This document shows positions 18,280 to 61,734 of a DNA stretch of 64,000 bases, piece by piece. Below the pieces are notes generated by a model, which had not been told where the DNA came from, searched no databases, and saw nothing but the letters and a program-made list of their open reading frames with translations. The position numbers were made by a program, and so were the translations under genes. Source of the stretch: Haliotis cracherodii (lineage: Eukaryota); assembly GCF_022045235.1 (NCBI RefSeq), contig NW_027266271.1, forward strand, positions 12,586,001 to 12,650,000, given 5' to 3'. Within the stretch, counting starts at the first letter, position 1, and the number at the start of each line of letters is the position of its first letter.

Positions 18280-18603
18280 ATGTCGTCTGAATTCAGACCA
18301 ACTTCTCATCATGAATCCTGTGAAATCATCTGTACTCCCGATGGACAAGATATCCTGAATGAAAACAATCATACTGAGCACGAATCCATTGACGAAACTA
18401 AATTTACTACCGATAGTAATGCTCGCACTGACCACGACAATCCTGCGTCTGTTGAATATCACTACATTGACGACGTCAACCCAGCCTCTGCCTGTCAACA
18501 GGTGACAGAAGAACGCCAGTCGAAAGCTGATGATGACTATGAATGCATTGCTGACACCAACACTGCGTATGATTACCTTGAAGCAATAAACGAGCCACGC
18601 ACG
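18280..18603 (+). CDS. Orphan first exon S1 (108 aa, acidic Tyr-motif tail with ITIM-like and ITAM-like motifs); alternative first exon or truncated paralog
   Basis: Homologous to exon 1 of genes B/C/D; intact ATG context (ccaacaATG) and phase-0 donor ACG|GTAAGA; followed only by a truncated exon-2 start at 20009. Confidence 0.6.
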
Positions 18604-18979
18604 GTAAGAGTTGAAATTGTATGTTTTTATGGCACAGGTTACAAAGTTCATTTAAGCTTTTACTGTGTATTTGTTTCGGTTCATGTGGGAGATCAACGTC
18701 ATGCACTTTTAGATTTGTGGGTTTCATTGAGTATTCGATGGCAGGAAATTAAATTTGGAACACTTGAATTGCCTTTGCACGTGTTTGTGACGGGTGCCGG
18801 TGGTGGGGTAGGATAAGCGGATCTTTTCGCGAACGCCTGGTATCATCACTATTTAACAGTGATTTATAAACACATGCCGGCGGTATCGTCAGAATCGTTC
18901 CATGACCGCTCCTTTTAGCAGATATTTCCTCTGGTTAGGGAAAGGGTTTTATTTTGTAATCGGTACTCACTTTAATACA

Positions 18980-20739: not shown

Positions 20740-21666
20740 TTAAAAAGTATTTATCATTTAACTAAAGCATTTATCCATGACATAAGCTTATGACATAAAA
20801 ACGTGTATGTCATACCCCAATGACATAAGTATGCAAATTAGATGACAGGAAGTAGGACGTTTTTCGCCGTCGCACGTGAGTAGGTGTTTACAAACAATAT
20901 GGCTACCTTTGATGTTGGAGACAATGTTTCAATAGTTCAAAGGGGAAGTGCTACAGTGATATCCGTGTTCACAAATGGATGTTACAGATAACAGGTTGAT
21001 GAAACCGAATTTGAATTTGTCTGTGATGAAGGCAGATTATCAAAAATTCCCTGTGACCAACGTTTCGTCATGGAAACACCATCGTCGAGCACGACAAAGC
21101 AGACGACGAACACGAAGTCTAAAGATGTCCAAGGTAGATTTGTGGCTGTTGAGGATGGCATGATCGATGGTGTGATTCTAGTCAATCAAAACAAAAACAC
21201 AGCCAAGAAAACGTTGTACGATTTGAAACTGTTTGATAACTTTCTAAAATTCCAAAATGAAATTCGCCAAATGCATGAAATACCTCCAAACGAACTAGAC
21301 ACACTTCCCAGCAAGTTTTTCATTAGTGTTAAAAAAATAAAGGGGAAATTATGAGCAGTCTCACAGGTTTTCAGAGCAGCATCGAGAGGTCGCTAAAACG
21401 AAGGGGGTATGGCTATTCACTCACGCCATCTTTAGAATTTTCACGATCACGGTAAGTATTAAAGGGGAGGAAAATTTAACTAAAGAAAGAAGGGCGTGGT
21501 AACTTACCAAGGAGAGCTGACCCGATTGGTGATGAAGAGATCAAGTCCCTGTGGCAGTCCTGATCCATTGGAATCAGTAATCATAAACTGATTAAATAAA
21601 CTGTCTATGGCTCCACAACAAAATCCATTTCGTGTTAAGAGGTGCCAGTGAGCAGTACAACATGTG

Positions 21667-21697
<31 letters not shown>

Positions 21698-23525: not shown

Positions 23526-23548
23526 ATACTACTCTGACATTACCAACA

Positions 23549-26500
23549 ATGTCGGCTAAATTCAGACCTATTTATCAGGAATCTGGTGAAGAAATCATCC
23601 CTACTCCTGAAGGACAAGAGATGCTGCAAGTAAACAAACCTGCTGAGTACGAATCCATTGACGACAAGTCTACTGCCGGTAGTTACGCTAGCACTGACCA
23701 CAACAACCCAGGTTCTGTTGAATATCACTCCACTGACGACGTCAACCAAGCTCCTCCCGATCAACAGGGGACGGAAGAAAGCAAATCGGATTCTGATGAT
23801 GGCTATGACTGCATTGCTGACGTTAACCCTGTGTATGACTACATTGAAGCAATAAACGAGCCACGTACTGTAAGAGTTGAAATGGTGTATTTTTAACCCA
23901 CAAAGTTATAAGTCTCGGATCAGAATAAAATCATTTATTTTAATTATCTAACATCACCGTTCCATTGTGTTATGACGATTCTTGTACCGGTCTAACTGTA
24001 ATAATTCTAACTGTTTAAGAATATTTCGGTGTCCCATAGGCATGACAGCAACCCTTGATTGCAGCTTCGAATTCACCATGCTTATGATCAATGGTTAACG
24101 TGTACCATATCCATGCTTGGCGTCTAAATAATATTGCAATCAGTTGGAAGATTACCAAACGAATCTGTGGTTAAGAAACTGTAAATAAAGTACATATCAT
24201 AATAAAATGGTGATACGGGGTTATCGAGTAAGGTAGTGTTACATACATAATATTTGGAGGCAAGTGGTATTTTGGTTTTATTTTTTTGTCGACCTCATAC
24301 ATAACTTTTCACAACCAGTAAAATGTTCAAACACAAGGTTATTTTAACGCTTGAGTGCACACACTGTAAATCCTCAAACGACTTTTTCAGATGTCAATGA
24401 GAGAAGCAGCATCTGGAAGGATCATGATTGTCGGTCTGATAATAAACCTCATTGCCGGCGCCTTCTCTGTCTTCTGCAAAAGAAGAGCTGACCGGGAAGA
24501 GGCCTGCGTCAGTTTTCGACTGGCCACTGCAGTGGCTGGTACAGTATATCCAAACTATGTGTTTAGACATCATCGTACTCACTAACTCATTTCTGAACGC
24601 ATACCTTTCATGATGTTTATATTCTTTTTCAGCTGTCTGCTGTGTGCCGCTTATGATCAAATATGATCTCAGGAAGGTAGCCATTGCCGGAAGCGTCGGT
24701 CTCATCTGTTTTTGTACACTGCTGACAGTGTCACTGGCAACTGGAATTGATGTCCTAATTGTTCCAGAAAGTATCATTGGGGGTATGGTTGTGACATTTT
24801 GTTATGGAAGGCAGCAGCTGGTTAACATATGTAAAGTTAATTTCATAAAAAAACGGATGTCTGATAATGATCCAATTTCTTTACGTCTTGATTTTGTTAA
24901 AAGTATTGCTGTATTTATTTTTATTGACTTTTAGGGATGGAGACTGAGGTGGGAGAAGAATTCAAATCAATTAATAGCAGTTCTAATTTGTTTACTTTGA
25001 AAATGAAATACCTGCTGAATGTAAGTAAGACAAAAGGAGCCACACGAGCCTTATAGTGGCCTATATAGTTGCGCCCCTCAGCTGTACCAGGATTCTCAGA
25101 TCAAACGTGTGCTCGCCATAGTATGATTCTTTGTTTGCACGATAGTCGTGTTGATGGGTTTCACCAAAGCGGTAAACGTCTACGATTTGCATCACTTCGA
25201 GTTGTTCTCCCACATGAAGCTGACACGCACTAGTATAACTGAAATACTGTTCAAAGCAGCGTTAAAACCAACTCATCCATTCAAGCAGGAAACTATCGGG
25301 AATGCAGTAAATACATATTGTTACCTGTTTCTGCTCGTTTTTGTTCCTTTAATAATGAAGTAGTTATATTGAGTATCATATTTTATTCGTCTTTATAAGA
25401 GATTCTACATGTTAAAACACAAAACATAACATTTAAGCTAATATTTGTAAAAACACCCATCTATATTACAGGTACTGCATACGGCCTTTTGGGTACAGCT
25501 GGATTTGTCGGCACCATCCTCCTCCTCCCTGGCCGCCTTGCTCTCGCTGTCTTCATCAGTTACGTCGGATGCGTCATTGGAAACATCATCGGCATCACTA
25601 TCAGCTATAAAGTTGATCCGTATGCTTTGTGGGCACTGCCAGCGCTTGGTCTGTTGTGTTGCAGGTTCCTTTCCCACTACGAGAAAACAAGAAATATAAC
25701 CAATATTTTGAGACATTCTTCATTTTATGTCACGTTGATAATGAGAACGTCAGTCTCTATTGGTGAGTTTTACGTCCTTTCAAAGCCATTCAGTCAGATA
25801 AAGTTTTGTTGTACCTTCTGGCAACAACTGATTAAAGTTTAATGTTTCCTTTAACGGCAGCAGATGAGCTGCACACTGACGACTACACACATTTAAATAA
25901 CAATATATGATGGATTGATAATGAAATATTTTATAGATGTTAACCCAGTAGGTATTAGGGGCCTGGTGTAATGAGATTGAATGTGGATTGAAACTAATAT
26001 AACATATGCTTTGAGCAGGTTTTTGCGATGCAAGGACCACTGGGTTGCTTCTATTCACTACACCTATCACTATTTATTTTTTCCAGGATTGGCAATCCTT
26101 CCATCGCTGATCAAAACTGTGTCCATTGCAGAAACGCAATATTTTCTGTTCCTTGTCCTCTTCGGCAGTCAAGTAATGTACATGGTTATTTTGGTAATGA
26201 GTGTCAGGTTTTGGAGAGAAAACCTGCGGAATCCTAGCCCAACACCTTTGGGAATGGTGGTTCTGATGATCGGACTTGGCACCTTGATCCATCAGGTTGT
26301 ACCTATGAACGTATGGATTGTGGGAGTCTATATGGCCTTGCTTGGGATAGTATTGGGTATGATACACTGAAAATATCAATTTATGTTCGAAACAACATTT
26401 CAAGATCTTCTCTTAACATTAACCATTAACGATATGTGTTCAAATCTTGTATCAGTTTTCTCAAAATAGACCTTTCAAGTATGTCTGCAAGGGAAGCATC

Positions 26501-28501
26501 TCTAATGTTGTCGTTTAGCCCACACGATAAGAGTCATCTTCAATCTTCAATTAATACTTAGTTGATCAATATTTTGATAAATGGTACACTGCAATAGCAA
26601 TATATAACCCTTGCACATCTTGGACGATCGATTAATGTCACCATTTTCAGAGTTACTTAGTATTTTTTCTGACTTGATGGGTAACATTTGTTTATAAAAA
26701 ATGTTATGTGTTCGTGGATCGGAGGTTTTCACCTCGTCATCGTGGTGTGACAGGCTGAGCAGATGCTTCCCTTAGTCTAGCAAGAATCCGAGATTATGTA
26801 ATTAGGGTTATCAACACCATACCAGTGCTAATGGGTTTAAATACAGTGGTAAACATCTAAGACAAGCATAGTTTGTGATTCAATCAACATTAGCTGCTAT
26901 ATAATCAGTAGTGTTCAAGACGTCGTAAACACAAATCACGCATACCTTTCTCCGTCTTTCAGTTGGCTTGCTTAAAAAAGTAAACATACAATGTGTCTTT
27001 CGCAACAGCGCGTCCATTATTGCAATAAGTATTTCTCATAGTAATCTTGACCTTGCAGCGTACTCTCACGTAATGATGCCACTGGTAATGCTGCATGCTA
27101 CGGGCACTGCCAACTGCAGACTGACCATTCCTGTCTTGAGATGCTGTGATGAAGTTGGTATAATCCTGGGTGTCGTCATTCTCGGTAGGAAAGATGCTGA
27201 CATAGTTGTCGTGAACCTATATTTGAAAGTTATATACACTTCATGGTGATAATAATCTCATTAATAGCGAGCAAGTTTCTATTTTGTCTTCTTTCTGTTT
27301 GTTACATAGCATATGTCTTCTCTACACTGAATGGTCCAGTGAAGTTTGTTTAAAATTCCTAGTCCTTAAGATTGTCTTCACTGGATAGTTTTCGGTTGTT
27401 AAAGGCCTTGTACAAGGAACGATAATGTCTCCGCACAGAGAGAGACCTATTGCTGGCTCCAGCAAATGTTACACCTAATCCCTGTCTAAAAAAATAAACA
27501 TTATTCTAAACAAAGTCAAGGAATGACTTTCTTTATATTCACAGAAAGTATTCGCGACAAGTCATATCATGTGAGTTCTTAAAAAGTCAGAGGATTTGTT
27601 TCAACATTTACAATCTCAAACAGATTGTTCACTGTCACTTATGTCACAAGTGACACTTTTGTCACAATATTTGATTTTTCACTTAAACCCCACTATCACA
27701 CACGACAATCGTAAGGAGCGGAATCATTCCTTAACCCATGAGGCATTTGTCACTAAAAGGGTTAACCATAGATTTTGATACGTCAATATCGTCAATGTTT
27801 CAGGTCAATTTGTTCAAAATGAAAACAAGTGCCATCTGTAGTTTATAAAGGAAACAGTATGTGAAATGATAGACTTTCTTAATGATAACATCTAGGGGAT
27901 ATTTGGGGATAGGACATTTAGGCAAAAAGGTAGGCATCCCCATGGTCTCCAATTGCGCTCCCTTTCTTACTGATACGTTTCTTAATGAGTATGGATTTCT
28001 GCTCGTTCTGCAAATTCAAAACAAGGACAATGTGGCTTAATTTAAGCATCAGGTATATCAACGATAAATAAATATCACAAACAGTTTTAAAATCGCACTC
28101 TAAAGAATCACGGGGCACAAGGCGTAAACTTATGAAGATCCAAGTATGTACAAGGCATCTCCATTTGCACTGATCATTATTGTCCTAAACGATGTTGCAA
28201 ATAAAGCGTTTCCTTTCCTTTCCTTTTCCAAAATCACAGCACATGTTTTCTTTTCCTCATTTACTTCCTTCATATTTTCCATAACATTCACGGAAAGTTG
28301 ATATGTGTAGATATGCTACTCAAATAGTTTCATGTGTGTGTCTATGCTTTTGCAGATAGAGAGACATTTTGGACACAGAATGGAGCCTTGTACTTTGCTG
28401 GAGGGATTCTCGTCGTGTCCGGGGTCGGCATCCTACTGGCGAGAGGCTACTTGAGACGCCCGCCTCCTCTGACAGATGAGGCTTTATCAATAGTTGGCTA
28501 A
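23549..28501 (+). CDS. Gene B: divergent SLC16-like MFS transporter with ITAM-like acidic N-tail, 483 aa, 7 exons
   Basis: Exons 23549-23869, 24391-24538, 24633-24782, 25472-25762, 26087-26356, 27059-27184, 28356-28501; all GT-AG, same intron phases as gene A (0,1,1,1,1,1), frame open (1452 nt). Confidence 0.82.
27300..28070 (+). mobile_element. Penelope-like RT fragment in gene B intron 6 (longer paralog at ~46830-48330 in gene C)
   Basis: RQKVGIPMVSNCAPFLTDTFL ... RYIND resembles the PLE motifs GIPMGTNCAPLLADLFL ... RYIDD; boundaries approximate. Confidence 0.65.
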
Positions 28502-35224: not shown

Positions 35225-35542
35225 ATGTCGTCTGAATTCAGATCAACTTCTCATCATGAACTCGGTCATCATGAAATCACCCGTACCCCTAACGGACAAG
35301 AGATCCTGGATGAAAACAGTCCTGCTGAGCACGTATCCACCGACGAAACGAAATCTACTACCGATAGTAATGCTCGCACTGACCTCAGTAATCCAGGTTC
35401 TGTTGAATATCCCTACAAAGACGACGTCAACCCAGCTTCTGCCTTTGAAGAAAGACAATCGGAAGTTGATGATGACTATGAATGCATTGCTGACACCAAC
35501 CCTGCGTATGATTACCTTGAAGCAATAAACGAGCCACGTACG
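35225..35542 (+). CDS. Orphan first exon S2 (106 aa, ITAM-like tail); alternative first exon or truncated paralog
   Basis: Near-copy of gene D exon 1; intact ATG and ACG|GTAAGA donor; followed by a truncated exon-2 start at 36632. Confidence 0.6.
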
Positions 35543-41751: not shown

Positions 41752-41773
41752 AACTACTCTGACATTACTAACA

Positions 41774-44700
41774 ATGTCGGCTAAATGTAGACCTATTTAT
41801 CAGGAATCTGGTGAAGAAATCATCCCTACTCCTGAAGGACAAGAGATGCTGCAAGTAAACAAACCTGCTGAGCACGAATCCATTGACGACAAGTCTACTG
41901 CCGGTAGTTACGCTAGCACTGACCACAACAACCCAGGTTCTGTTGAATATCACTCCACTGACGACGTCAACCCAGCTGTTCCCGATCACCAGGGGACTGA
42001 AGAAAGCAAATCGGACTCTGATGATGGCTATGATTGCATTGCTGACGTTAACCCTGTGTATGACTACATTGAAGCAATAAACGAGCCACGTACGGTAAGA
42101 GTTGAAATGGTGTATTTTTAACCCACAAAGTTATAAGTCTCGGATCAGAATAAAATCATTTATTTTAATTATCTAACATCACCGTTCCATTGTGTTATGA
42201 CAATTCTTGTACCGGTCTAACTGTAATAATTCTAACTGTTTAAGAATATTTCGGTGTCCCATAGGCATGACAGCAACCCTTGATTGCAGCTTCGAATTCA
42301 CCATGCTTATGATCATTGGTTAACGTGTACCATATCCATGCTTGGCGTCTAAATAATATTGCAATCAGTTGGAAGATCACCAAACGAATCTGTGGTTAAG
42401 AAACTGTAAATAAGGTACATATCATGATAAAATGGTTATATAACGTACGGGGTTATCGAGTAAGGTAGTGTTACATACATAATATTTGGAGGCAGGTGGT
42501 ATTTTGGTTTTATTTTTTTGTCGACCTCATACATAACTTTTAACAACCAGTAAAATGTTCAAACACAAAGTTATTTTAACGCTTGAGTGCACACACTGTA
42601 AATCCTCAAACGACTTTTTCAGATGTCACTGAGAGAAGCGGCATCTGTAAGGATCATGATTGTCGGTCTGATAATAAACCTCATTGCCGGCGCCTTCTCT
42701 GTCTTCTGCATAAGAAGAGCAGACCGGGAAGTGGCCCGCGTCAGTTTTCGACTGGCCACTGCAGTGGCTGGTACAGTATATCCAAACTATGTGTTGGTTT
42801 TGATAGATAAATGCAACGTGAGGAAGAAAGCATGTAACAAATGCATTTTCTTTCAATTTCAAACGGAAATACGTACACAAATGCATTTCGTACATGTTAT
42901 ATAGCTTAAACATCTGGCAACATCGAACAGGTCGTTCAAAAATATAGCACTACCTTCTATGATAATATTAAGTGTCGCCCTATTTAACTCTTTGACGTAT
43001 ATTGACGAAGTCAAAGGCTCGGGTCATTTGCGGGTTTGAACTTGTATGTAAATTTATGTATTGGAATGGCTTTGTAGACCCTGATGCACAATAGCCACAA
43101 GGGCAACGTGTGTGTCTGGTGTGTATCCTTTAAACGCATTGTGTGAGTGAGTTCAGTGTATCACCACATTGAAAGGTGTTTCCGTAATTTTACATGTTGT
43201 CAGCTTGATAATAGGGGAGAGCTGGAAGTGATGCTCATATATGTGTATATAGTGCAGGCCGTCATGATATTAATTTTACTGCGGCATTAAATACCATATG
43301 CTCATTCCAAGAGAAGGTCGGACAAGTGTACCAGACCTCATGGTCATCTTGCTGGAATATGAGGCCTCAAACCACATGCTCTCGCCCAACCCTGCTTCAA
43401 TATTATTTACAAGCATGCAGTATTTTCATATATATTACAATGTATTAAGACTGAACTATTCCGATACGACGTTAGACATCATCGTACTCACTAACTCATT
43501 TCTGAACGCATATCTTTCATGATGTTTATATTCTTTTTCAGCTGGCTGCTGTGTGCCGCTTATGATCAAATATGATCTCAGGAAGGTAGCCATTGCCGGA
43601 AGTGTCGGTCTCATCTGTTTTTGTACACTGCTGACAGTGTCACTGGCAACTGGAATTGATGCCCTAATTGTTCCAGAAAGTATCATTGGGGGTATGGTTT
43701 TGACATTTTGTTATGGAAGGCAGCAGTCGGTTAAGATATGTATAGTTAATTTCATAAAAAACGGTTGTCTGATAATAATCAAATTTCTTTAAGTCTTGTT
43801 TGTGTTAAAAGTATTGCTGTATTTATTTTTATTGACTTTTAGAGATGGAGACTGAGGTGGGAGAAGAATTCAAATCAATTAATAGCAGTTCCTATTTGTT
43901 TACTTTGAAAATGAAATACCTGCTGAATGTAAGTAAGACAAAAGGAGGCATACGAGCCTTATATTGGCCTTACGTGTCGTGCAGAGTTGCGTCCCTCAGC
44001 TGTACCAGGATCCTCAGATCAAATGTGTGCTCAAATGTGTGCTCGCCATAGTATGATGTTTGCACGATAGTCGTGTTGTTGGGTTTCACCAAAGTGGTAA
44101 ACGTCCACGATCTGCATCACTTCGAGTTGTTCTCCCACATGAAGCTGACACACACTGGTATAACTGAAATACTGTTCAAAGCGGCGTTAAACCCAACTCA
44201 TCCATTCAAGCAGGAAACTATCGGGAATGCAGTAAATACATATTGTTACCTGTTTCTGCTCGTTTTTGTTTCCTTTAAGAATGAAGTAGTAATATTATGT
44301 ACCATATTTTATTCGTCTTTATAAGAGATCCGACATGTTTAAATACAAAACATAACATTTAAGCTAATATTTTGAAAAACACCCATATATATTACAGGTA
44401 CTGCATACGGCCTTTTGGGTACAGCTGGATTTGTAGGCACCATCCTCCTCCTCCCTGGCCGCCTTGCTCTCGCTGTCTTCATCAGTTACGTCGGATGCGT
44501 CATTGGAAACATCATCGGCATCACTATCAGCTATAAAATTGATCCCCCGATGTCTCGGTATGCTTTGTGGACACTGGCAGCGCTTGGTCTGTTGTGTCGC
44601 AAGTTCCTTTCATACTACGAGAGAACAGGAAATATAACGGATGTTTTGAGACATTCTTCATTTTATGTCACGTTACTAATGAGAACGTCAGTCTCTATTG

Positions 44701-47700
44701 GTGAGTTTTACGTCCTTTCAAAGCCATTCAGTCAGATAAAGTTTTGTTGTACCTTCTGGCAACAACTGATTAAATTTTGATGTTGCCTTTAACAGCAGCA
44801 GGTGAGCTACACACTGACGACAACACACATTTTTAATCACAATATATATGATGGACTGATAATGAAATATTTTATAAATGTGCCAGATCAAAAACAACTA
44901 TCTGAGTTTGTTCAATGAATAATTTGTATTCAGTTATAATGAAAAGAATATCTGTTTCTGTTTGAATCTTTACTTCACACAGGTATTCTCCATATTATGG
45001 AGGACCATACAGAGTTTTTTTTGGACACGTAGTTCAGACATAACAGACATATAGTCTAGAGTAAATACGAATTTATTCTGCCTCTTAAGTTCTCATTAGC
45101 CAATAATTTGCCGTAAAAGGCAACCAGAGAGGATCGAGTGGTCAGATTTTTTGGGGGGCTGATTGTGTGTGTGTGCGCGTGTGTGTGTAATAGGTGCTCA
45201 TATCTTCGTTCAAAGGTTTGCCTGTTGGAGGCTCAATTATTTACAGACCAATGTAACACAGCTGGAATGTTTGCTGCAAATCACCCACTCAGTCTTCAGT
45301 GTTGGCATATGACCTTATGCATGGTGCAAATGTCACAATCCAGTGAAGTTAAGCAACTTGGGTGAACACTGGTGAATTGGTCATTCCGTAGAGTTTCTGT
45401 ACTACCCGTGACGGCACCACAGTTAATTCATCATGAATGTCTCATTTGACCCGACCTTCCCGACCTTCCTCTCTGTTAACCCAGTAGGTATTAGGGGCCT
45501 GCTGTAATGAGATTGAATGTGGATTGAAACTAATATAACATATGCTTTGAGCAGGTTTTTGCGATGCAAGGACCCTTGGGTTGCTTCTTTTCACTACACT
45601 TATCCCTATTTTTTTTCCAGGATTGGCAATCATCCCATCGCTGATCAAAACTGTGTCCATTGCAGAAACGCAATATTTTCTGTTCCTTGTCCTCTTCGGC
45701 AGTCAAGTAATGTACATGGTTATTTTGGTAATGAGTGTCAGGTTTTGGAGAGAAAACCTGCGGAATCCCAGTCCAACACCATTGGGAATAGTGGTCCTGA
45801 TGGTCGGACTTGGCACCTTGATTCATCAGGTTGTACCTATGAACGTGTGGACGGTGGGAGTCTATATGGCCTTGCTTGGGATAGTATTGGGTATGATACA
45901 CTGAAAATACCAATTTATGTTAGAAACAACATTTCAAGATCTTTACTTAACATTAACCATTAACGATATGTGTTCAAATCGTGTATCAGTTTTCTTAAAC
46001 CAGACCTGTCAAGTATGTCTGCAAGGGAAGCATCTCTAATGTTGCCGTTTAGCCCACACGATAAGAGTCATCTTCAATCTTCAATTAATACTTAGTTGAT
46101 CAATATTTTGATAAATAGTACACTGCAATTGCAATATATAACCCTTGCACATCTTGGACAATCGATTAATGTCACCATTTTTAGAGTTACTTAGTATTTT
46201 TTCTGACTTGATTGGTAACATTTGTTTATAAAAATGTTATGTGTTCATGGATCGGTGGTTTTCACTTCGTCATCGTGGTGTGACAGGCTGAGCAGATGCT
46301 TCCCTTAGTCTAGCAAGAATCCGAGATTATGTAATTAGGGTTATCAACACCATACCAGTGCTAATGGGTTTAAATACAGTGGTAAACATCTAAGACATGC
46401 ATAGTTTGTGATTCAATCAACATTAGCTGCTATATAATAAGTAGTGTTCAAGACGTCGTAAACACAAATCACGCACACCTTTCTCCATCTTTCAGTTGGC
46501 TTGCTTAAAAAAGTAAACATACAATGTGTCTTTCGCAACAGCTCGTCCTTTATTTCAATAAGTATTTCTCATAGTAATCTTGACCTTGCAGCGTACTCTC
46601 ACATAATGATGCCACTGGTAATGCTGCATGCTACGGGAACTGCCAACTGCAGACTGACCATTCCTGTCTTGAGATGCTGTGATGAAGTTGGTATAATGCT
46701 GGGTGTCGTCATTCTCGGTAGGAAAGATGCTGACATAGTTGTCGTGAACCTATATTTGAAAGTTATATACATTTCATGGTGATATTAATCTCATCAATAA
46801 CAAGCAAGTTTCTATTTTGTCTTCTTTCTGTTTGTTACATAGCATATGTCTTCTATACACTGAATGGTCCAGTGAAGTTTCCTAGTCCTTAAGATTGTCT
46901 TCACTGGATAGTTTTCGGTTGTAAAAGACCTTGTACAAGGAACGATAATGTCTCCGCACAGAGAGAGACCTATTACTGGCTCCAGCAAATGTTACACCTA
47001 ATCCCTGTCTAAAAAAATAAACATTATTCTTAACAAAGTCAAGGAATGACTTTCTTTATATTCACAGAAAGTATTCGCGACAAGTCATATCATGTGAGTT
47101 CTTAAAAACTCAAAGGATTTGTTTCAACATTTACAATCTCAAACAGATTGTTCACTGTCACTTATGTCACAATATTTGATATTTCACTTAAACACCACTA
47201 TCACACACGACAAACGTAAGGAACGGAATCATTCCTTGATCCATGAAGCATTTGTCACTAAAAGGGTTAACCATAGATTTTGTTGCGTCAATTTTTTCAA
47301 TGTTTCAGGTCAATTTGTTTAAAATGAAAACAAGGGCCATCTGTAGTTTATAAAGGAAAGAGTATGTGAAATGATAGACTTTCTTATTGATAACATCTAG
47401 GTGATATTTGGGGATAGGACATTCAGGCAAAAAAGGAGGCCTCCCCATGGCCACCAATTGCGCTCCCTTTCTTACTGATATGTTTCTAAATGCATATGGA
47501 TTTCTGCTCGTCTTGGCAAATTCAACACAAGGACAAGGGGGCTTAATTTAAGCATCAGGTATATCAACGATCTGATAGCATTCACCGTGGCTTTATTGAA
47601 AATGTCATTTTTGGATATATTTCATCCACTGCATGTTTGATTATGAAATTTAATATGCTCCAGTAATGTTGTTTTCGGGATAACATATAATACGTTTCGT

Positions 47701-48903
47701 GGCATATTAAGCTGATCTAGCTTCGACTACTGACATTCAAGTACCCACGTTTTTTGTGTTACAGCATTTCGACATCTCCTCTGAAACTAAGAACACAAAT
47801 TGTGCAAGTTTGGAAAACCATATGTTAGACCCCACCACACACTAGCCTGTCACACTGTTTCATCAAATTATCTTCATACATTGGGGAGCATTGGCAAAAA
47901 GAAGGTTTGACATGGAAACCAAACTTGACTTAAAAAAACAAATGGTTCGAACATCACTGGGTGATGTCGGCAGAAAGATTGTACAGGCAACGTTTCACCA
48001 TCCAACATTTTTAAATTTAGGAGAAACTTGAGAAATAAATTCAAGCAGGCCACAAGTGTCCACGAACGAGGGGCCGCCGATTTTGCTAATTTGACTAGTG
48101 TGTCAAGTCCCAAACAACTATTGCTTCAGCAGTCGGCTAAGGACCTACATCACGTTAAAAGGTGTTCTTGTTCGTGACAGACTGCTTGAAAGCAACACGA
48201 CCTTGTAATCTCCAGTAAACCCGATACCGACTTTTGCAGTTGAAAGACTTTCTCTCTTCTCCTGTGGTACTGTTTCACTGTTGAAGCTGAGATTTGGCAT
48301 GCAGGTTCCATCTTGTGAAGACATTGTATCTTGTGATCAATGTGATTTTAAAAAAAAACAATATTAAAAAATTAAATGTCACAAACAGTTTTAAAATTGC
48401 ACTCTTAAGAACCACGGGTCACAAGGCGTAAACTTATGAAGATCTCAAGTATGCACAAGGCATCTCTAATTGCACTGATGATTGTTGTCCTAAACGATGT
48501 TGCAAATATAGCGTTTCCTTTCCTTCCCTTTTCCAGAATCCCAGCCCATGTTTTTCTTTTCCTCATTTTAGAAGTTTGTACTAAAATAAGGTTGATGTAT
48601 CATACAATTATTTCTTCATAAATCAGGTGAGCTACAGATATTGTGGCTCTATTTACCTCTAATAGGGATATATCCCTCATATTCTCATAATCTTCAGGGA
48701 AAAGTTGTGTAGATATGCTACGCAAATATTTTCATTTTTATGTCTATGCTATTGCAGATAGAGAGACATTTTGGACACAGAATGGAGCCTTGTACTTTGC
48801 TGGAGGGATTCTCGTCGTGTCCGGGGTCGGCATCCTACTGGCGAGAGGCTACTTGAGACGCCCGCCTCATCTGACAGATGAGGCTTTATCAATAGTTGGC
48901 TAA
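41774..48903 (+). CDS. Gene C: recent duplicate of gene B, 487 aa, 7 exons
   Basis: Exons 41774-42094, 42623-42770, 43542-43691, 44398-44700, 45621-45890, 46592-46717, 48758-48903; all GT-AG, frame open (1464 nt). Confidence 0.82.
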
Positions 48904-51396: not shown

Positions 51397-52736
51397 TATA
51401 CTCAACAACAAAAGTTCCTGTGACACCAATATTTTAGTGTATTTTTCAAACAAGTAAAGCTTGGTTTTCAATATTGTAGTACAATGTACATGTATGGAAT
51501 CAAGTCACAAAAACGCAACTGCTACAGAAAAGCATGCATTCCATGCAAAAGTTGACTTTTATGCAAGCCCCATGCATTTCACTGTCCAAGAATGGGTATA
51601 TAAACGTGCGTTAACGGGATTCCATATGCATTGTTTAGCATCGTGCTGAAAAATTACGCAATTATTCAACATTACGAAATGCCATGCCTGTCCGAAAATG
51701 AGCGTCTGCGAGCCATTGGTATTCTTGAAGCAGGATCGAGTCAACGTGATGTTGCAAGACAATATAACGTCCACAGAAACACCATGTGGTGTTTATTGCA
51801 ACGTTGACAACAGTCGAATGCAGTCAGAGACCATCCTCGGAGTGACAGGCCACGCGTAACCAATAAGCGACAAGACAAGAATCCACCGTCAAACACGTCT
51901 ACAGTGGTGCAGACAGCATCTACGCTGGACGACCATGCAGTGGGGACAAGTTCTATTCACTGACGGGTCTCGTTTTCACCTCAGCCACAGCGATGGACGG
52001 ATTCGAGTGTATCGACGTCGAGGTGAACGTTACGTCAATCATTGTGTCATGGAGGAAGATCGGTTCGGGGCGGCAGCGTTATGGAATGTGGTGGGATTAC
52101 AGCAAGAAAGAGGACCCGTTTGATAGTGATAGAGGGAAATCCTAATGGACAGAGCTACTGCGACGAGATCATCGGCCCTGTTGTTCTACCGTTTTTGCGT
52201 CGTCATGGCCCAGGCATTACATTTCAACGTGACAACGCCCCGCCTCATATTGCTCGACTTGTTCAGGATTCCCTTCAACAAAACAACGTGAATATCATTC
52301 CCTGGCCGGCTCGCTCCCCTGATCTCTCACCAATAGAGCACTTGTGGGGTGAGATGGATCGGCGCCTTCGACGTCATCCACGTGTTCCACAGACACTCCA
52401 GGAACTTCGAAACATGCTCCAGCAGATATGGACAGATATCCCACAGGACTTTGTGCGACGCCTGGTCCATTCCATGAGACGAAGATGTGTTGCTTGCATC
52501 GCAACCAGAGGTGGACACACACGCTATTGATTTGTAAATTGACATTTTGGCATGTTCATGTTTTTTGTGTGAAATCACGCATTTTCTGAAGTCAGTATGG
52601 CAAATTAAACCGTTTGAACACGTACAGGAGTCTTTTATCTATTGCAAACCGAAATTGTTTCAGATTTGGTTAAAAACTTAACTTTAAATGCATTAAATCT
52701 TATTCAGTGTCAAAGGAACTTTTGTAGTTCAGTATA
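51397..52736 (+). mobile_element. Tc1-family DNA transposon, same family as 3595-5078, internally deleted
   Basis: Same TIRs; ORF 52042-52530 has FQRDNAPPH, WPARSPDLSPIEHLW and GGHTRY; absent from the paralogous spacer near 31.2 kb. Confidence 0.9.
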
Positions 52737-54209: not shown

Positions 54210-54374
54210 NNNNNNNNNNNNNNNNNNNNNNNNNNNNNNNNNNNNNNNNNNNNNNNNNNNNNNNNNNNNNNNNNNNNNNNNNNNNNNNNNNNNNNNNNNN
54301 NNNNNNNNNNNNNNNNNNNNNNNNNNNNNNNNNNNNNNNNNNNNNNNNNNNNNNNNNNNNNNNNNNNNNNNNNN
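54210..54374. other. Assembly gap (N run)
   Basis: Run of n. Confidence 1.
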
Positions 54375-56248: not shown

Positions 56249-59200
56249 ATGTCGTCTGAATTCAGATCAACTTCTCATCATGAACTCGGTCATCATGAAA
56301 TTACCCGTACCCCTGACGGACAAGATATCCTGGATGAAAACAGTCCTGCTGAGCACGTATCCGTTGACGAAACGAAATCTACTACCGATAGTAATCCAGG
56401 TTCTGTTGAATATCACTACATTGACGACGTCAACCCAGCTTCTGCCTTTGAAGAAAGACAATCGGAAGTTGATGATGACTATGAATGCATTGCTGACACC
56501 AACCCTGCGTATGATTACCTTGAAGCAATAAACGAGCCACGTACGGTAAGAGTTGAAATCGCATGTTTTTATGGCACTGGTTACAAAGTTTATTTAAGGA
56601 TTCACTGACTTTGTTTCGGTTCATTTGGGAGATCAACGTCAGAATTGTTTAGATTTGTGGGTTTCATTGAATATTCGATGGCAGGATATTTCATTTGAAA
56701 CACTTGAATTGCCTTTGCATGTGTTTGTGACGGGTGCCGGTTTGTGTGCCAGTGATATTATCTGAATCAATCCATCATGACCTCTGCAGGGATTTCTTCT
56801 GTTTCATTCACCCTCTCATTGCATGTTCTTAATTAATCATGTTCTCGTGCATTTCTTCTTCGTATGTAACATAGCACTTCATTTATATTGCATACATAAT
56901 ACTAAAATACGAACAACTTCAATTCAATTTGTATGCGGAAACAACTACGTCATGAAAAGTGGTCATAAGAGATATTTCATTCATAAGCCCACATTTGCTA
57001 GCCAATCTAAACATAACCTATATTACAATATTAAAGAAGTTATTATCCATAAATTGTGTCTACTTTGTCATCCGTCAACTTCTAGGTAATGCTTATCAAA
57101 CAATTCAATCTAAACATAACACAAATATAAGAAGAAATCCAGTTTGCTTTAAGAACGGAACCAAAACAGAGAAACAGAAGGAAACCAGTGTGTCGCAATG
57201 TCATCACTGACATAGTACAAATATTAATATGTTATTTCTTGGTTATTTCAGCCTGCATCGAGGAACAGTGCTGTAGATAAGTGTAAGAAGACCATGCTTT
57301 TTCTTGGTCCAATATTTGCCAGTGTGACAGTGAACATCATAGCTGGGTTCTTCTATTCCTTCCCGTTTCTTGTCCCTGTCATCTCAAGAAGAGCATTCAG
57401 TGAAGGGACGGACCCGGACGTTAAAATCCCAAACATATATTGGGCGTGTTCTGGACTGGCAGGTATATTAAGATGAATGAGTGGTTATGGCTGATGCCGC
57501 TTTATGCAATTGTTCAGCAATGCAATAGCACGGCGGGGGACATCTATCAGAAATGGGATACACACATTGTACCCGTGTGGGGGAATCGAACCCGGGACAT
57601 TGGATTGACGAGTGAGCGCTTTATTCACCGTCCCAATTACGAATTGGTCCCTTTAAGCTAAATGAATCATGGTAACCAACCTCACATCTGTCTGTAATTT
57701 TCAATGTCAATAGACAGGGATTGTATATTGCCAAATGTTTACATATATATAGTGAAACTTTATATTGCACATATGTGGTGTATTTCAGCTGCTTCCTGTG
57801 CGCCGCTTATGATCAAATGCGGCTTTCGGAAGGTCGCTCTGGGCGGAAGTGTTCTACTCAACTTTTATAGTATCTTGTCGCCGTTGTCAACCACAGGCGA
57901 TATCCTGACTATCATATTAAACGTCATGGGAGGATAGTCCAAATCCTTAAATGTTTTTCAAATGGAACCATGTAGAGCTTGTTTAACTTTCCAGATACAA
58001 ACCTCACACAGCCAAGACAAAGGCTAAGAATAAATTCAACTTAACACACAAGCGATCTCTTCTTGAACATTTTGTTTTAGGCCTAACTTGAGAATGTTAT
58101 ATGAACCGTACGTGTCATATGTGGATTACACAGTGATTCCTTGTGTTCACGGGGCGGTCAGGGAGCCTAGTGGTTAAAGCGTTCGCTCGTCACGCCGAAG
58201 ACCCGGGTTCGATTCCCGACATGGGTACAATGTGTGAAGCCCATTTCTGGTGTCCCCCGCCGTGATATTGCTGGAATCACTCACTCACTCACTCACTCAC
58301 TCTTTTATCTTCTGTTACAGTAAGTTGTCTGTGTCGACAAATATTCTGAACCTATGGACGGCTTTGAAAAGTTTAAGATATATAATTATGTGATGTACTA
58401 CAAAAGGGGTTCATAGCGCGATTGAAAAATTGTCTTAAACTATTTGACTTACGAGCGTATGTTTTATGAAATTTGTGTTAGGTTTTGCTGTTGGTCTTCT
58501 TCGGACGACTGGTGTCGTGGCTTCCTTGGACCATCTCTACACTCGCCCAGTTCTCGCTCTTATCACCAGCTACGCCAGCTTCCTCATTGGTGCTGTCAGC
58601 AGCAGCATCGTCTTGATTACTTGTAATTATCTAGACAGTAGACTGGATTGGTCTGACGCCATGTCTGTGTTTGCGATAACTGCTGTGATTGGACTTCTCG
58701 CTGGCAGCTTTCTGAAGAAGAATTTACAGACCCAGCAGAATGTGCCCAAGCTCTTCACATACCCACCGTTTTATTTTCTCATGTTGATAAGACTTGTGGC
58801 GTCTTTGGGTATGTTTAGTCAAATTTACAATGAATTTCTAAACTTTAATCAGGGTGCTGGGTGAACCTGTGCGTTTCAAATCGTCCCTTATCAGCCACAA
58901 CCCACTCGTCGCTGGTTCGAAAAGCAGAATCCTCCCACCTTAAACCTTGAATGAATGTCTGATCTTGACATTGACCATGGTATTTGTAATGAATTTGACA
59001 AATAACAGGGGTTGATAAAAGCAAATATTATTTGTCCTTATTGAATAGAAAAGTGTTCATATTACATTAAAATCTTTATTTACAAGAAACTTATCGGTCC
59101 CTAATCTTGAGAAGACTTTACAGAAACGGGTCTAGTACATTTAGCTACTGCGTAATATGGCCTAGTCACGTAATTCACAGTAGTGTGTTATAAGCATATA

Positions 59201-61734
59201 GGACAGTTGTTCAGTGTAGGCTAAAAACACTGATGGATCTTTTTCTGTCTTACAGGGTTGTCATTCGCTCAACCACCATTCATAATCATACATTCTGCAA
59301 GGGTTTACCTGCCTCTCCTCACCTTCTTCGGTCAGTTTATCGCGCTGATTGTTCTGCTGATCATCCAAAAGTTCATGAAGGAATGTCCGAAAAAGTCAGC
59401 TCTTCTATTGATGGGGATACCGATCCTAGCTACTGGCCTTGTCACCATGGTCCACAAGTTGGTTTTTGGCAGTTTGGGGTTTGTTGCGGTCTTTTTCGTC
59501 ATGCTTGGAGCTGTCAATGGTGGGTAAACCAGTGAGTGTACTCTATGCACGCACTAAGTTTTCATTAGTTTGAGGGGGCAGGGGTGGCACAGTTGTGTAT
59601 GTCACCGTAATATGCCGTGCAGAATAGCGCCCAGAAAACTGTGATCATAGGTACGAATTCCAGATTCGCCTTCACTGTGGGTCTAGGTTTGTTAGCACCA
59701 TCCAGAGCTTATGAGTTTCACCAAAGAGGAAAACATCTAACACCTGCATCACATCGGTGGTGAGTGAGTAAATGAGTGACTGATTGAGTTGGGTTGAACG
59801 CCGCTTTTAACAGTATTCCGGCTATATCACGGCGTGTCAGCTTAATGTGGGAGGAAAGCCCGAAGTGATGCAGGTCTCAGGCGTTTACCACTTCGGTGAA
59901 ACCCACGAGCACGGGTATGGTGCTGACAAACCTAGAAACATAATCTGGGCGAACCGAGATTCGAACCCACATTCAAAGGGACGCAAGTCTGTACAGCGAA
60001 TCACGGAGCCTTAGACGACTGGGCCACTCGTGCCCCCTCCTTTTACATGAAGCTGACACACTGTGAAATACTGTTCCCAACAACATTAAACCCATCTCGC
60101 TGTCCAGGCTGATAACCTGAGACCTGCATAACTTCTGTTATACCCCACATCACGCAGACTCGCCGTGATACATAAACTGTTTAAAGCGATGTAAACTGTA
60201 AATCACTCACTCGCACTTTAGTTCTATTGTGCGATGTCTCGTTTATACTGTCATGTGTTTGTCTAAAAATAATCACATAAGTAAATGAAGACTTACATCT
60301 TGAGATTTGTATAAATATTCCAGTACTCTCTAAAGTAATGATACACCTAGCGTTGGTCCACACCACGGGTAGAAGCAACTTGAAACTGGCCCTCCCAGTG
60401 CTTGGCTGCTTTGAGGAGATAGGGGGTCTTATCGGCAACTCCATCATTGGTAGGTAGTGTTCTGTGTTTCTTCAGCGTCAGTTACGTAAACTTGTAAAAC
60501 ATGAACCAGTGTCAAAATGACAGGGTCAACATAAAGCCAACACTGATACACTATCGACACACAATACTGTCTGTACTATATGAACAATGTATTGTATTTA
60601 TTAACCTTCATGTGGATACTGTGGATAATACACACTTCTGAAAAGAAATGAGTTTAAGTTTCAATCATAGATGAACAGCCACAGAGAAAATTATATCTAC
60701 AGTATCACTGCTTGATTTTGAAAAATGGTATATTTCCTGTGTCCATGTAGTCCATCATAAATACCATGACCCCTGCCACTGACAATGAAGGGCAGTAAGT
60801 AGAAAATCATTAGCAATCCTTTTTTGTTAACATGAATACTGATCCTTCCTTCGACCTTTTACAAAGTACTGGTACAGCATAACTCAACTGTGGATAGTGT
60901 GATTTCAGGCTTATTTAGAGATGTTACTTATTCATTATCTTAGTTTAAGATGTACGTATGATATTCAAAACTCTTTCAGAATTATCATCCTTTCTATCCA
61001 GCGTGTTGCAGGAGAGCTTCTGTAGGTGCTCCAGTAGAATAATACTGTAGACTTAACTTTACAGCTTACGGTACTTTCTCTTTCGAAGGACACTTATTCA
61101 TGGTTTGTGTGCTATTTGTCTGGGAGACTTGTAAGTGTCACATCAGTCTTCCAGAGTTATTTAAGTGCATCCATTATGGAGCCGGCTCGGCACGTTATAT
61201 TTCTGAAATATAGGCCATCGCTACGGCTCAATATGTATTTTAAAATCTATCTCTTTCTTTTACCATCCAAATCTTGATGTATATTTGACGTACAATGAAA
61301 ATGGTAAAAGTTGCTGGGATTATTTTATTAAAATCAGAATAATATATTTTAATAATAATGTTAACACGTCACGCCTGGATAATACAAGCTACACATAGGT
61401 GATCCGCGAAATATATAAACTAACTCAATCCATAAAAGGTATGAAAGACCCAAAACGCTCACCACACCAAATCTGTAAGGTTCACTTACAGGAACAAATT
61501 ATACATCTTTTTTTTGTTACATGGATCAAACATGACCACTTTTAGTTAAGGATTCTGGTTGTGTTTGTCATTTCAGCAAAATTCATACAAGGAACATCTT
61601 TAGCGAATGGAGGCATATATTTTGCTGGAGTGTCCATGGGCCTTACGGGAGTTGGTGCCATCGCTGCATGGGTGCTGATGAAACAATGGCCCAATCTGAG
61701 TGATGAGGCTGTCGAGAACACCGGCGAGGAGTGA
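56249..61734 (+). CDS. Gene D: SLC16-like MFS transporter with an A-type body and an ITIM/ITAM-like tail, 508 aa if spliced; intron-3 donor is GA, so possibly a pseudogene
   Basis: Exons 56249-56545, 57252-57462, 57789-57932, 58482-58808, 59256-59519, 60324-60449, 61577-61734. All exons are open and in phase, but exon 3 ends GGAG|GATAGT where gene A has GGAG|GTATGT. Confidence 0.7.

What the first reader, a model, noticed from the sequence alone, without database searches (positions are those of the whole stretch)
18280..61734. Tandem family of MFS/SLC16-like transporters fused to an ITAM-bearing cytoplasmic tail: candidate signalling 'transceptor' cluster
Seen: exon 1 of genes B, C, D and both orphan exons encodes ~100 aa of acidic, hydrophilic sequence ending in DDDYECIADTN(T/P)AYDYL (18538-18579, 35477-35518, 56480-56521) or DDGYDCIADVNPVYDYI (23804-23845, 42029-42070). 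Both Tyr, the +3 I/L residues, the 6-residue spacer and the Asp at -3 are kept in all five copies, while spacer residues and the rest of the tail vary. Established: D/ExxYxxL/I-x6-8-YxxL/I is the ITAM consensus bound by tandem-SH2 kinases (Syk/ZAP70, Shark), and MFS N-termini are cytoplasmic. I know of no SLC16 member with such a tail. Inference: a duplicating family of 12-TM proteins coupling a transporter fold to phosphotyrosine signalling, possibly in immune or nutrient sensing.
Basis: partly seen in the sequence, partly recalled or inferred. Interest (0 to 1): 0.85.

Follow-up and report, generated by a model that had tools for sequence, protein, structure and literature searches.

The report
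Abalone transporters with ITAM-like tails
Black abalone has an abalone-only, tandemly expanded family of divergent monocarboxylate-transporter-like membrane proteins with a disordered acidic N-terminal tail; the tail keeps a paired-tyrosine motif shaped like an immune-receptor signalling motif, but whether it signals or only directs trafficking is untested.

Summary
All five motif copies lie exactly where stated, in roughly 100-residue acidic exons (pI about 4.1).

The window is Haliotis cracherodii. RefSeq proteins P0016 (gene A), P0024 (gene B) and P0035 (gene D) are reproduced from its letters.

- The two "orphan" exons are not orphans. In genes B and C both tail exons are coding exons of one gene, giving two motifs per protein.
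- Gene D has a non-canonical GA splice donor, and its RefSeq model is truncated at 344 aa.
- The N gap at 54210-54374 is intergenic.

The membrane body folds as a 12-helix MFS. Its nearest relatives are SfMCT and MCT1 by profile, fold and language-model features. It falls below Pfam's MFS_1 cut-off and lacks the SLC16 signature residues.

The genome holds 24 tail exons in three clusters. The pattern Y..[IL]-x6-Y..[ILM] is kept in 33 of 36 tail modules from four Haliotis species, with no Tyr-to-Phe change. It overlaps an NPxY. Aplysia and Plakobranchus homologues have no tail.

Function is unproven. A phosphotyrosine docking site (ITAM-like, about 0.4) competes with YxxPhi/NPxY sorting signals (about 0.3). 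Synonymous sites in the motif are also nearly invariant, so protein-level selection is not shown. RNA reads could not be obtained.

The parts
9531..15249 (+). Gene A, the tail-less paralogue (489 aa). Exons 9531-9656, 10292-10505, 11654-11797, 12260-12592, 13544-13831, 14480-14605, 15011-15249. It has a different, short acidic first exon containing S-D-F-Q-S-I.
   Evidence: Reproduces RefSeq protein P0016 exactly with GT-AG introns. MFS_1 29.8 bits, E 3.9e-7.
18280..18603 (+). Gene B tail exon a (108 codons, pI 4.19). Motif at 18538-18579.
   Evidence: Residues 1-108 of P0024. Donor ACG|GTAAGA.
21008..21133 (+). Optional linker exon of gene B (RefSeq model P0024). It overlaps a Crypton-like recombinase remnant in another frame.
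   Evidence: Residues 109-110 of P0024 cannot be placed on the window with canonical sites. H. rufescens isoform X2 (P0030) skips this exon.
23549..23869 (+). Gene B tail exon b. It has its own ATG at 23549 and an internal acceptor AG|23579 used in the RefSeq model. Motif at 23804-23845.
24391..28501 (+). Gene B membrane body. Exons 24391-24538, 24633-24782, 25472-25762, 26087-26356, 27059-27184, 28356-28501 (with stop).
   Evidence: Exact reproduction of P0024 residues 111-625, all GT-AG. AF2 gives 12 helices, pLDDT about 80.
35225..35542 (+). Gene C tail exon a. Motif at 35477-35518.
41774..42094 (+). Gene C tail exon b (ATG 41774, internal acceptor at 41804). Motif at 42029-42070.
42623..48903 (+). 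Gene C membrane body. Exons 42623-42770, 43542-43691, 44398-44700, 45621-45890, 46592-46717, 48758-48903 (with stop). A linker-exon homologue lies at about 39512-39616.
   Evidence: Mapped from gene B. All exons are open and in phase, and all introns are GT-AG. No RefSeq protein was found for it.
56249..56545 (+). Gene D tail exon a (99 codons). Motif at 56480-56521.
   Evidence: Residues 1-99 of P0035.
57252..61734 (+). Gene D body. Exons 57252-57462, 57789-57932 (followed by GA, not GT), 58482-58808 (the RefSeq model reads on to a stop at 58864), then open homologues of exons 5-7 at 59256-59519, 60324-60449 and 61577-61734.
   Evidence: P0035 (344 aa) is reproduced only if the GA donor is allowed. 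Downstream exons come from homology to gene A.
54210..54374 (.). Assembly gap, intergenic between genes C and D.
17256..17404 (.). Assembly gap, intergenic between genes A and B.

Best explanation
Genes B, C and D belong to a Haliotis-restricted, tandemly expanded clade of divergent SLC16-like MFS membrane proteins. Each carries an N-terminal, intrinsically disordered, strongly acidic module of about 100 residues that most likely faces the cytosol. Genes B and C carry two modules in series.

The best-conserved parts of the module are tyrosine-based short linear motifs: an upstream E-Y-x-Y-I-D-D block, and D-Y-E-x-[IL]-x6-Y-D-Y-[IL]-E, which overlaps an N-P-x-Y.

Most likely mechanism (inferred, not shown): the tyrosines are phosphorylated by Src- or Syk-type kinases. 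The resulting pY-[E/D]-x-[I/L] sites then recruit SH2 or PTB proteins, so the tail acts as an ITAM-like docking or regulatory site on a transporter-fold protein.

Shown: the gene structures, the fold, the family distribution and the motif conservation.
Inferred: cytosolic orientation, phosphorylation and the binding partners.
For: Gene structure:
- Tail exons are joined to the body in RefSeq models that the window reproduces.
- AF2 leaves residues 1-253 of P0024 at pLDDT about 30-37 and builds 12 helices at about 80.

Orientation:
- The positive-inside count and the motif-A-like loop 2-3, aligned to MCT1 and SfMCT, put the N-terminus in the cytosol.

Motif conservation:
- The pattern is kept in 33 of 36 modules from H. 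cracherodii, rufescens, rubra and asinina.
- There is no indel in the 14-residue block, although the rest of the tail has many.
- Majority-residue conservation is 0.77 in the block against 0.47 in the rest.
- No Tyr-to-Phe change occurs at any of the three tyrosines. The only losses are to His or Asn, in 3 modules.

Sequence context:
- Y+1 is always acidic at the first Tyr (E or D) and D/N at the second. +3 is I or L at the first Tyr in every module and I, L or M at the second in all but one (Ser in P0002). Acidic residues precede the first Tyr. From general knowledge this matches Src/Syk-class SH2 and kinase preferences better than adaptin preferences.
- Chance expectation of the pattern is 0.3-0.5% per tail.
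- The module is duplicated in series in genes B and C and in the H. rufescens orthologue.

Precedents:
- An oyster receptor ITAM binds CgSyk (PMC6994640).
- The acidic N-terminal Tyr8/Tyr21 of the transporter Band 3 are Syk substrates and SH2 docking sites (PMC13404981).
Against: - There are no expression, phosphorylation or binding data.
- Synonymous sites in the motif are also almost invariant: 18 genomic copies share CCTGCGTATGATTAC[A/C]TTGAA.
- In 10 pairs the block had about half the dN of the rest, but about half the dS too. Protein-level selection on the motif is therefore not demonstrated. Gene conversion, recency or exon-end splicing constraints could contribute.
- The spacer itself is conserved (A-x-T-N-P-x), unlike classical ITAMs, which points to a compound motif with NPxY.
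- No Syk or Shark orthologue was identified. The tandem-SH2 loci I inspected look like SHP-2, PLC-gamma, PI3K p85 and a Csk-like kinase (identified from my own knowledge of those sequences).
- Tail-less gene A has acidic-F-x-x-I in its own first exon, which a phosphotyrosine reading does not explain.
Confidence: 0.4

Rival explanations
1. The tyrosine motifs are unphosphorylated sorting signals. YxxPhi would be read by AP-2/AP-3 mu subunits, and NPxY by PTB adaptors such as Dab2, ARH or Numb. Helped by the acidic cluster, these would send the transporter to endosomes, lysosomes or a specialised compartment.
For: Y-E-x-[IL] and Y-D-Y-[IL] both fit YxxPhi. N-P-x-Y is present in 28 of 36 modules. 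The conserved spacer residues (T-N-P-x) are explained by NPxY, not by an ITAM spacer. The motifs lie about 15-25 residues before TM1 in single-tail members, a usual distance for endocytic signals (general knowledge). Tyrosine and dileucine signals in the N-terminal tails of polytopic transporters are common (general knowledge). The absence of Tyr-to-Phe changes also fits mu2 binding.
Against: NPxY is lost in 8 modules that keep both YxxI/L. The residue at -5 from the NPxY tyrosine is D, G or E rather than the aromatic of FxNPxY. The invariant acidic Y+1 is not required by adaptins. In genes B and C the first module lies about 150 residues from the membrane. Serial duplication of a sorting signal has no obvious benefit.
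Confidence: 0.3
2. The block is conserved for reasons other than a protein-interaction motif. The family may be young, paralogues may exchange sequence by gene conversion, or the last 75 nt of the exon may be constrained as splicing-enhancer sequence next to the donor. On this view the ITAM-like pattern is a frozen accident of the ancestral tail.
For: dS in the motif block is lower than in the rest of the tail in 9 of 10 pairs, and dN/dS is not lower. Several motif codons are single-codon invariant across 23 copies. The first intron bases (read-through T-V-R-V-E) are also shared among clusters. The rest of the tail evolves at dN/dS of about 0.5-1.5.
Against: The pattern survives in H. asinina and H. 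rubra proteins whose neighbouring residues have changed (A to G, A to P, C to F/D). Changes within the block fall on non-key positions (91, 93-95) and spare Y, +1 and +3. There are no indels in the block. The sample is only 17 codons, so dS is very noisy.
Confidence: 0.12
3. The motifs are acidic-aromatic-x-x-[ILV] sites of the LIR/AIM type (Atg8/LC3 binding) or a similar hydrophobic-pocket ligand. They would couple the transporter to autophagy or another scaffold.
For: D-D-Y-E-C-I, N-D-Y-E-S-L and gene A's S-D-F-Q-S-I (also kept in the H. asinina orthologue P0014) all fit [DEST]n-[WFY]-x-x-[LIV].
Against: Within the tail family no F or W ever replaces Y at three positions in 36 modules, which is unexpected if only an aromatic side chain were needed. 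The fixed pairing and spacing are not explained.
Confidence: 0.08
4. The tail is extracellular or luminal, and the acidic tyrosines are sulfated ligand-binding sites, as in chemokine-receptor N-termini.
For: Tyr flanked by Asp/Glu is the usual tyrosylprotein sulfotransferase context (general knowledge).
Against: The protein has 12 helices with an MFS 6+6 layout and the cytoplasmic motif-A-like loop 2-3. Lys/Arg are concentrated on the N-terminal side of TM1 and on the even loops. There is no signal peptide, and the acidic tail is 100-250 residues long.
Confidence: 0.03

Closest known systems
SLC16 monocarboxylate transporters (human MCT1/MCT2/MCT10; bacterial SfMCT)
   Same: The fold is a 12-helix MFS. 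SLC16 gives the best profile-to-PDB hits (SfMCT E 1.4e-6, MCT1 4e-6) and the best Foldseek hits (6zgr, 6g9x, 6lz0; TM-score 0.73-0.78 on the target). The nearest ESM Atlas clusters are named monocarboxylate transporter 10 and 13-like. The loop 2-3 and pre-TM5 R-P-x-L-A segments are similar.
   Different: Identity is only 15-17%. Pfam MFS_1 is below its gathering score. There is no [DE]G[GS][WF][GA]W before TM1, and no Asp/Arg pair in TM8. The TM6-7 loop is short (about 18 residues). The acidic N-terminal tail modules have no counterpart in SLC16.
Canonical ITAMs (FcR gamma, CD3, Ig-alpha/beta, DAP12; oyster CgIgR, PMC6994640)
   Same: Two Y-x-x-[IL] sites 6 residues apart, acidic residues upstream, on the presumed cytosolic side of a membrane protein. 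The module can be repeated in one chain, as in CD3 zeta.
   Different: The carrier is a polytopic transporter fold, not a single-pass receptor or adaptor. The motif is N-terminal. The spacer is conserved and contains NPxY. No kinase or tandem-SH2 partner is shown.
Draper/CED-1/MEGF10 cytoplasmic tail (NPxY plus ITAM read by Ced-6 and Shark; PMC4503800)
   Same: NPxY and an ITAM-type pair of tyrosines are combined in one invertebrate tail.
   Different: In Draper the two motifs are separate and the ITAM spacer is longer. Here NPxY overlaps the second ITAM tyrosine. The carrier protein is unrelated.
Band 3 / AE1 (SLC4A1) acidic N-terminus
   Same: A solute carrier whose disordered, very acidic cytoplasmic N-terminus carries two tyrosines in a D-D-Y-E-type context. 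These are phosphorylated by Syk and then bind an SH2 kinase (PMC13404981).
   Different: The transporter fold is unrelated (SLC4). The Band 3 tyrosines are 13 residues apart and are not YxxL/I pairs. No homology is implied.
Tyrosine-based sorting signals (YxxPhi of TfR/LAMP1; NPxY of LDLR/APP)
   Same: The letters fit both consensus patterns, at a suitable distance from the first transmembrane helix.
   Different: There is no aromatic residue at -5 of NPxY. Y+1 is invariantly acidic. The spacing between the paired tyrosines is fixed.

Membership tests
ITAM (immunoreceptor tyrosine-based activation motif) | Two Y-x-x-[L/I] separated by 6-8 (up to 12) residues | tested here: met
   Spacing is exactly 6 in all five window copies and in 33 of 36 modules of four species.
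ITAM (immunoreceptor tyrosine-based activation motif) | Acidic residue upstream of the first Tyr (D/E-x-x-Y) | tested here: inconclusive
   Asp at -3 is present in the five window copies. Most paralogues read E-A-N-D-Y, with the acid at -1 and -4 but not at -3.
ITAM (immunoreceptor tyrosine-based activation motif) | Lies in the cytoplasmic part of a membrane protein | tested here: inconclusive
   Inferred only, from MFS topology, the aligned cytoplasmic loop 2-3 and the positive-inside count. No experimental topology is available.
ITAM (immunoreceptor tyrosine-based activation motif) | Both tyrosines phosphorylated by Src-family kinases | not testable with these tools
ITAM (immunoreceptor tyrosine-based activation motif) | Doubly phosphorylated motif binds the tandem SH2 of a Syk/ZAP-70/Shark kinase present in the organism | tested here: inconclusive
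   The SH2 scan of the genome gave 58 hits. The tandem-SH2 loci I inspected resemble SHP-2, PLC-gamma, p85 and a Csk-like kinase. No Syk or Shark was identified, but the scan is exon-wise and incomplete. Syk is known in oyster (PMC6994640).
SLC16 / monocarboxylate transporter family | 12-TM MFS fold with SLC16 proteins as nearest relatives | tested here: met
SLC16 / monocarboxylate transporter family | Signature [D/E]G[G/S][W/F][G/A]W leading into TM1 (recalled from the literature) | tested here: not met
SLC16 / monocarboxylate transporter family | TM8 Asp/Arg pair and TM1 Lys used for proton-coupled monocarboxylate transport in MCT1-4 (recalled) | tested here: not met
   The HMM alignment puts hydrophobic residues opposite the F-V-D-M-V-A-R-P segment of MCT1. 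TM8 of P0024 has no charged residue in its core. The alignment is remote, so this is indicative only.
Pfam MFS_1 (PF07690) | Score at or above the gathering cut-off of 33.4 bits | tested here: not met
   P0016 scores 29.8 bits, P0003 31.7 and P0014 31.8. P0024 has no hit at E 0.01 or better. Single exons give nothing. The matches do span the whole profile (3-345 of 347), and fold evidence supports the superfamily.
YxxPhi / NPxY sorting signals | Y-x-x-bulky hydrophobic, or [FY]-x-N-P-x-Y, in a cytosolic tail | tested here: inconclusive
   YxxPhi is met at two sites. N-P-x-Y is present in 28 of 36 modules but without the aromatic at -5. Adaptor binding is not testable here.
LIR/AIM (Atg8-interacting motif) | [W/F/Y]-x-x-[L/I/V] preceded by acidic residues, with aromatic residues interchangeable | tested here: inconclusive
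   The pattern is met, but no F or W ever replaces Y in 36 modules. Gene A's separate first exon has S-D-F-Q-S-I.

The most novel reading that the evidence does not exclude
A transporter-fold protein family has acquired a true ITAM. On substrate binding or clustering, the N-terminal tail (single or doubled) would be phosphorylated and recruit a tandem-SH2 effector (Syk/Shark, or SHP-2/p85). These abalone-specific SLC16-like proteins would then act as signalling 'transceptors' in immunity or nutrient sensing, and the tandem expansion would reflect diversification of what they sense.
Probability: 0.2. Interest if true: 0.85.

Novelty: new variant of a known kind. Interest (0 to 1): 0.55.

Why it matters
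All members are annotated only as 'uncharacterized protein', and no paper mentions them. They form a genus-restricted expansion: at least 24 tail exons and about as many membrane bodies in three clusters. This suggests recent adaptive use of a transporter scaffold.

If the paired tyrosines are phosphorylated docking sites, this would be the first MFS protein with an ITAM-type module. It would give a direct, testable link between a solute-carrier fold and phosphotyrosine signalling in a mollusc.

If they are sorting signals, the family is an ordinary but undescribed lineage-specific endomembrane transporter group.

Either way, the corrected gene models are useful for annotation: tandem tail modules, an exonised transposon fragment, and a decaying copy D.

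Tried and rejected
No junction is confirmed by reads.

2. Pfam on single exons of the body and on the five tail exons gave nothing useful.

3. The E1a-to-linker junction of P0024 could not be reproduced with canonical sites. Residues V109 and T110 have no place in the window letters. The direct E1a-to-E1b junction (as in H. rufescens isoform X2) is canonical in the window.

4. The dN/dS contrast of motif block against the rest of the tail was inconclusive: dN is halved, but dS is too, over only 17 codons.

5. The profile search with alignment A1 saturated at 8000 candidates, probably on the acidic repeats, and added only P0035.

6. Search for a Syk/Shark gene through SH2 hits: the inspected loci look like Csk-like, SHP-2, PLC-gamma and p85 genes. 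This is no verdict on Syk.

The gapped form worked.

8. The motif occurs nowhere else in the genome, so there is no sign of exon shuffling onto other receptor families.

9. They were checked exon by exon, by reference and in phase, only locally.

10. Complex prediction was not used. I do not claim a specific binding pair, and phosphotyrosine cannot be modelled there.

Full report
**Observation**

A six-frame search finds the five motif copies at the stated coordinates:
- Type a: 18538-18579, 35477-35518 and 56480-56521.
- Type b: 23804-23845 and 42029-42070.

Each closes an ATG-started exon of 99-108 codons that ends at a GTAAGA donor. The exons are strongly acidic: 24-26 D+E against 5-7 K+R, pI 4.05-4.24, GRAVY about -1.1.

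Shuffling one tail gives the Y..[IL]-x(6-8)-Y..[IL] pattern in 0.3-0.5% of trials.

**Assembly gaps**

The gap at 54210-54374 lies between the stop of gene C (48903) and the ATG of gene D (56249). Its flanks align colinearly with the paralogous unit (31879-32675 and 33411-35738), where no exon exists. No reading frame crosses the gap. Only the adjacency of genes C and D depends on the scaffold.

**Organism and gene models**

The tail exon hit two Haliotis rufescens proteins. A body exon searched against 1.84 billion representatives hit only 11 proteins. Nine are from Haliotis, and two are distant, tail-less proteins from Aplysia and Plakobranchus.

H. cracherodii RefSeq proteins map to the window at 100% identity, so the window is black abalone, contig C8:12586001-12650000.
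- P0016 (489 aa) is gene A. It is reproduced exactly from seven GT-AG exons and has a different, short first exon.
- P0024 (625 aa) is gene B. From residue 111 onward it is reproduced exactly. It contains tail exon a, a 42-codon linker exon (21008-21133), tail exon b entered through an internal acceptor at 23579, and six body exons.

The 'orphan' exons are therefore consecutive coding exons of one gene, and the protein carries two motif-bearing modules. The H. rufescens orthologue has isoform X1 (with the linker) and X2 (exon a spliced directly into exon b). That direct junction is canonical in the window.

Two residues at the exon a/linker junction of P0024 cannot be placed on the window letters.

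Gene C, the 82-95% identical segmental duplicate, has all homologous exons open, in phase and GT-AG. I found no RefSeq protein for it.

Gene D corresponds to P0035 (344 aa). It is reproduced only if a GA donor after exon 3 (57932) is allowed, and it ends by read-through after exon 4. Homologues of exons 5-7 downstream are still open as far as 61734. Gene D looks like a decaying or aberrantly spliced copy.

Joined models of C and D were not sent to search tools. They were checked exon by exon.

These RefSeq models are predictions.

**Family identity**

Single exons give no Pfam hit. Full-length members match MFS_1 across the whole profile but below the cut-off (29.8-31.8 bits against 33.4). P0024 has no hit at all.

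Other lines of evidence point to SLC16:
- A profile of 31 members finds SfMCT (E 1.4e-6), MCT1 (4e-6) and MCT10 as the best solved relatives.
- AlphaFold2 leaves residues 1-253 of P0024 disordered (pLDDT about 30-37) and builds 12 helices (pLDDT about 80).
- Foldseek ranks SfMCT and MCT1 first, with 313 MFS-type hits at E of 0.001 or better.
- The ESM Atlas neighbours of P0016 are named monocarboxylate transporter 10 and 13-like.

TM8 lacks the Asp/Arg pair.

I therefore call the body a divergent SLC16-like MFS, not a demonstrated SLC16 member.

The positive-inside distribution and the aligned cytoplasmic loop 2-3 place the N-terminus in the cytosol. This is an inference.

**Size and spread of the family**

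The genome has 24 tail exons, one of them broken, and 24 matches to a body exon. They lie in three clusters, on C8 (continuing beyond the window), C4 and C18.

A gapped degenerate DNA pattern for the motif hits 18 places, all within these clusters, and 0 in the control. The module has not spread to other gene families.

**Conservation of the motif**

I aligned 36 tail modules from four Haliotis species.
- Y..[IL]-x6-Y..[ILM] is kept in 33 of 36.
- NPxY, which overlaps the second Tyr, is kept in 28.
- There is no indel in the block.
- No Tyr-to-Phe change occurs.

A second conserved block (N-P-x-S-V-E-Y-x-Y-I-D-D-V-N-P) lies about 25 residues upstream. Majority-residue conservation in a non-redundant subset is 0.77-0.78 in the two blocks against 0.47 elsewhere.

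One caveat matters. Synonymous sites in the motif are also almost fixed. Across 10 pairs the block's dN is about half that of the rest, but so is its dS. Selection at the protein level is plausible but not demonstrated.

**Mechanism**

The letters fit several short-linear-motif classes.

I favour a phosphotyrosine docking site (ITAM-like), at confidence 0.4, for these reasons:
- The Y+1 residue is invariantly acidic.
- +3 is I or L.
- Acidic residues lie upstream.
- The spacing is fixed.
- Phe never replaces Tyr.
- The module is duplicated in series.

Precedents are the oyster ITAM-Syk pair (PMC6994640), Draper's NPxY plus ITAM (PMC4503800), and the Syk-phosphorylated acidic N-terminus of Band 3 (PMC13404981).

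The main rival is unphosphorylated YxxPhi/NPxY sorting signals (0.3). This is the commoner role for such motifs in transporters, and it explains the conserved spacer.

Lesser rivals are:
- non-protein-level conservation (0.12);
- LIR-type motifs (0.08), hinted at by gene A's S-D-F-Q-S-I;
- extracellular sulfotyrosine (0.03).

A Syk or Shark gene was not identified. The tandem-SH2 loci I inspected resemble SHP-2, PLC-gamma, p85 and a Csk-like kinase (recognised from memory).

**Earlier notes of this scan**

Two notes on this window suggested alternative first exons (s1-834591) and a first-exon swap between genes A and D (s1-834590). The RefSeq models show serial rather than alternative use in gene B. 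They confirm gene A's separate first exon at 9531-9656.

Other unchecked notes report ITAM-type tails on IgSF and lectin receptor families elsewhere in this genome (s1-834033 and others). I did not test those.

**Verdict**

This is a real, undescribed, abalone-restricted family of SLC16-like MFS proteins with one or two disordered acidic tail modules carrying a conserved paired-tyrosine motif.

The 'ITAM transceptor' reading is permitted but unproven.

Novelty: a new variant of a known kind. Interest: 0.55.

Noticed in passing
window 20992-22219 and 39388-40367: A Crypton-like tyrosine-recombinase remnant lies between tail exons a and b of genes B and C (Phage_integrase hit, E 3.8e-6, at 21872-22219). 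The optional linker exon (21008-21133) overlaps its first ORF in a different frame, so it looks like an exonised transposon fragment.
   Followed up: partly
window 20981-21010: Residues V109 and T110 of RefSeq protein P0024 have no canonical place in the window. G-T-T-A-C-A lies 21 nt upstream of the rest of the linker exon and has no AG before it. This is either an indel difference from the annotated assembly or a model artefact.
   Followed up: partly
window 57930-57940: Gene D has G-A-T-A-G-T where gene A has the donor G-T-A-T-G-T. Read-through gives a stop two codons later. The RefSeq model P0035 uses this GA donor and is truncated after exon 4.
   Followed up: yes
window 28635-29663: A 45-bp tandem repeat of 23 copies at 94% identity sits just downstream of the gene B stop. 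The homologous place after gene C (about 49031-49308) is much shorter.
   Followed up: no
window 3984-5016, 51867-52527, 16368-16931 (-), 37239-37823 (-): Transposon remnants: Tc1/mariner-type transposase pieces (HTH_Tnp_Tc3_2, DDE_3) and a retroelement integrase C-terminal fragment.
   Followed up: partly
window 9531-9656 (gene A exon 1): The tail-less paralogue has its own short acidic first exon with S-D-F-Q-S-I. The H. asinina orthologue P0014 keeps it as N-D-F-Q-S-I. It is an acidic aromatic-x-x-I site with Phe in place of Tyr.
   Followed up: partly
tail exons, e.g. window 18445-18490 and 23711-23756: A second conserved block, N-P-x-S-V-E-Y-x-Y-I-D-D-V-N-P, lies about 25 residues upstream of the paired-tyrosine motif. 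It is as well conserved as the motif itself and contains another Y-x-Y-I.
   Followed up: partly
paralogues on C4 and C18 (P0015, P0022, P0033, P0034): These carry long C-terminal repeats rich in His, Asp and Glu (units like E-D-H-V-E-E-T, up to about 350 residues). The window's genes A-D lack them. They may bind metal or protons.
   Followed up: no
L025:2304-2792, L025:6232-6573 and L027:267-1983 (G000 C1:59.02-59.03 Mb): Two complete Csk-type SH2 exons lie 3.8 kb apart, followed on the same strand by a Csk-type tyrosine-kinase domain. This is either a tandem-SH2 Csk-like kinase or a pair of mutually exclusive SH2 exons.
   Followed up: no
G000 C8:12650539-12775790, just beyond the window: The cluster continues past the window, with at least six more tail exons and body exons (L005, L020-L024). 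One body-exon match contains a TAG and one a TAA.
   Followed up: partly
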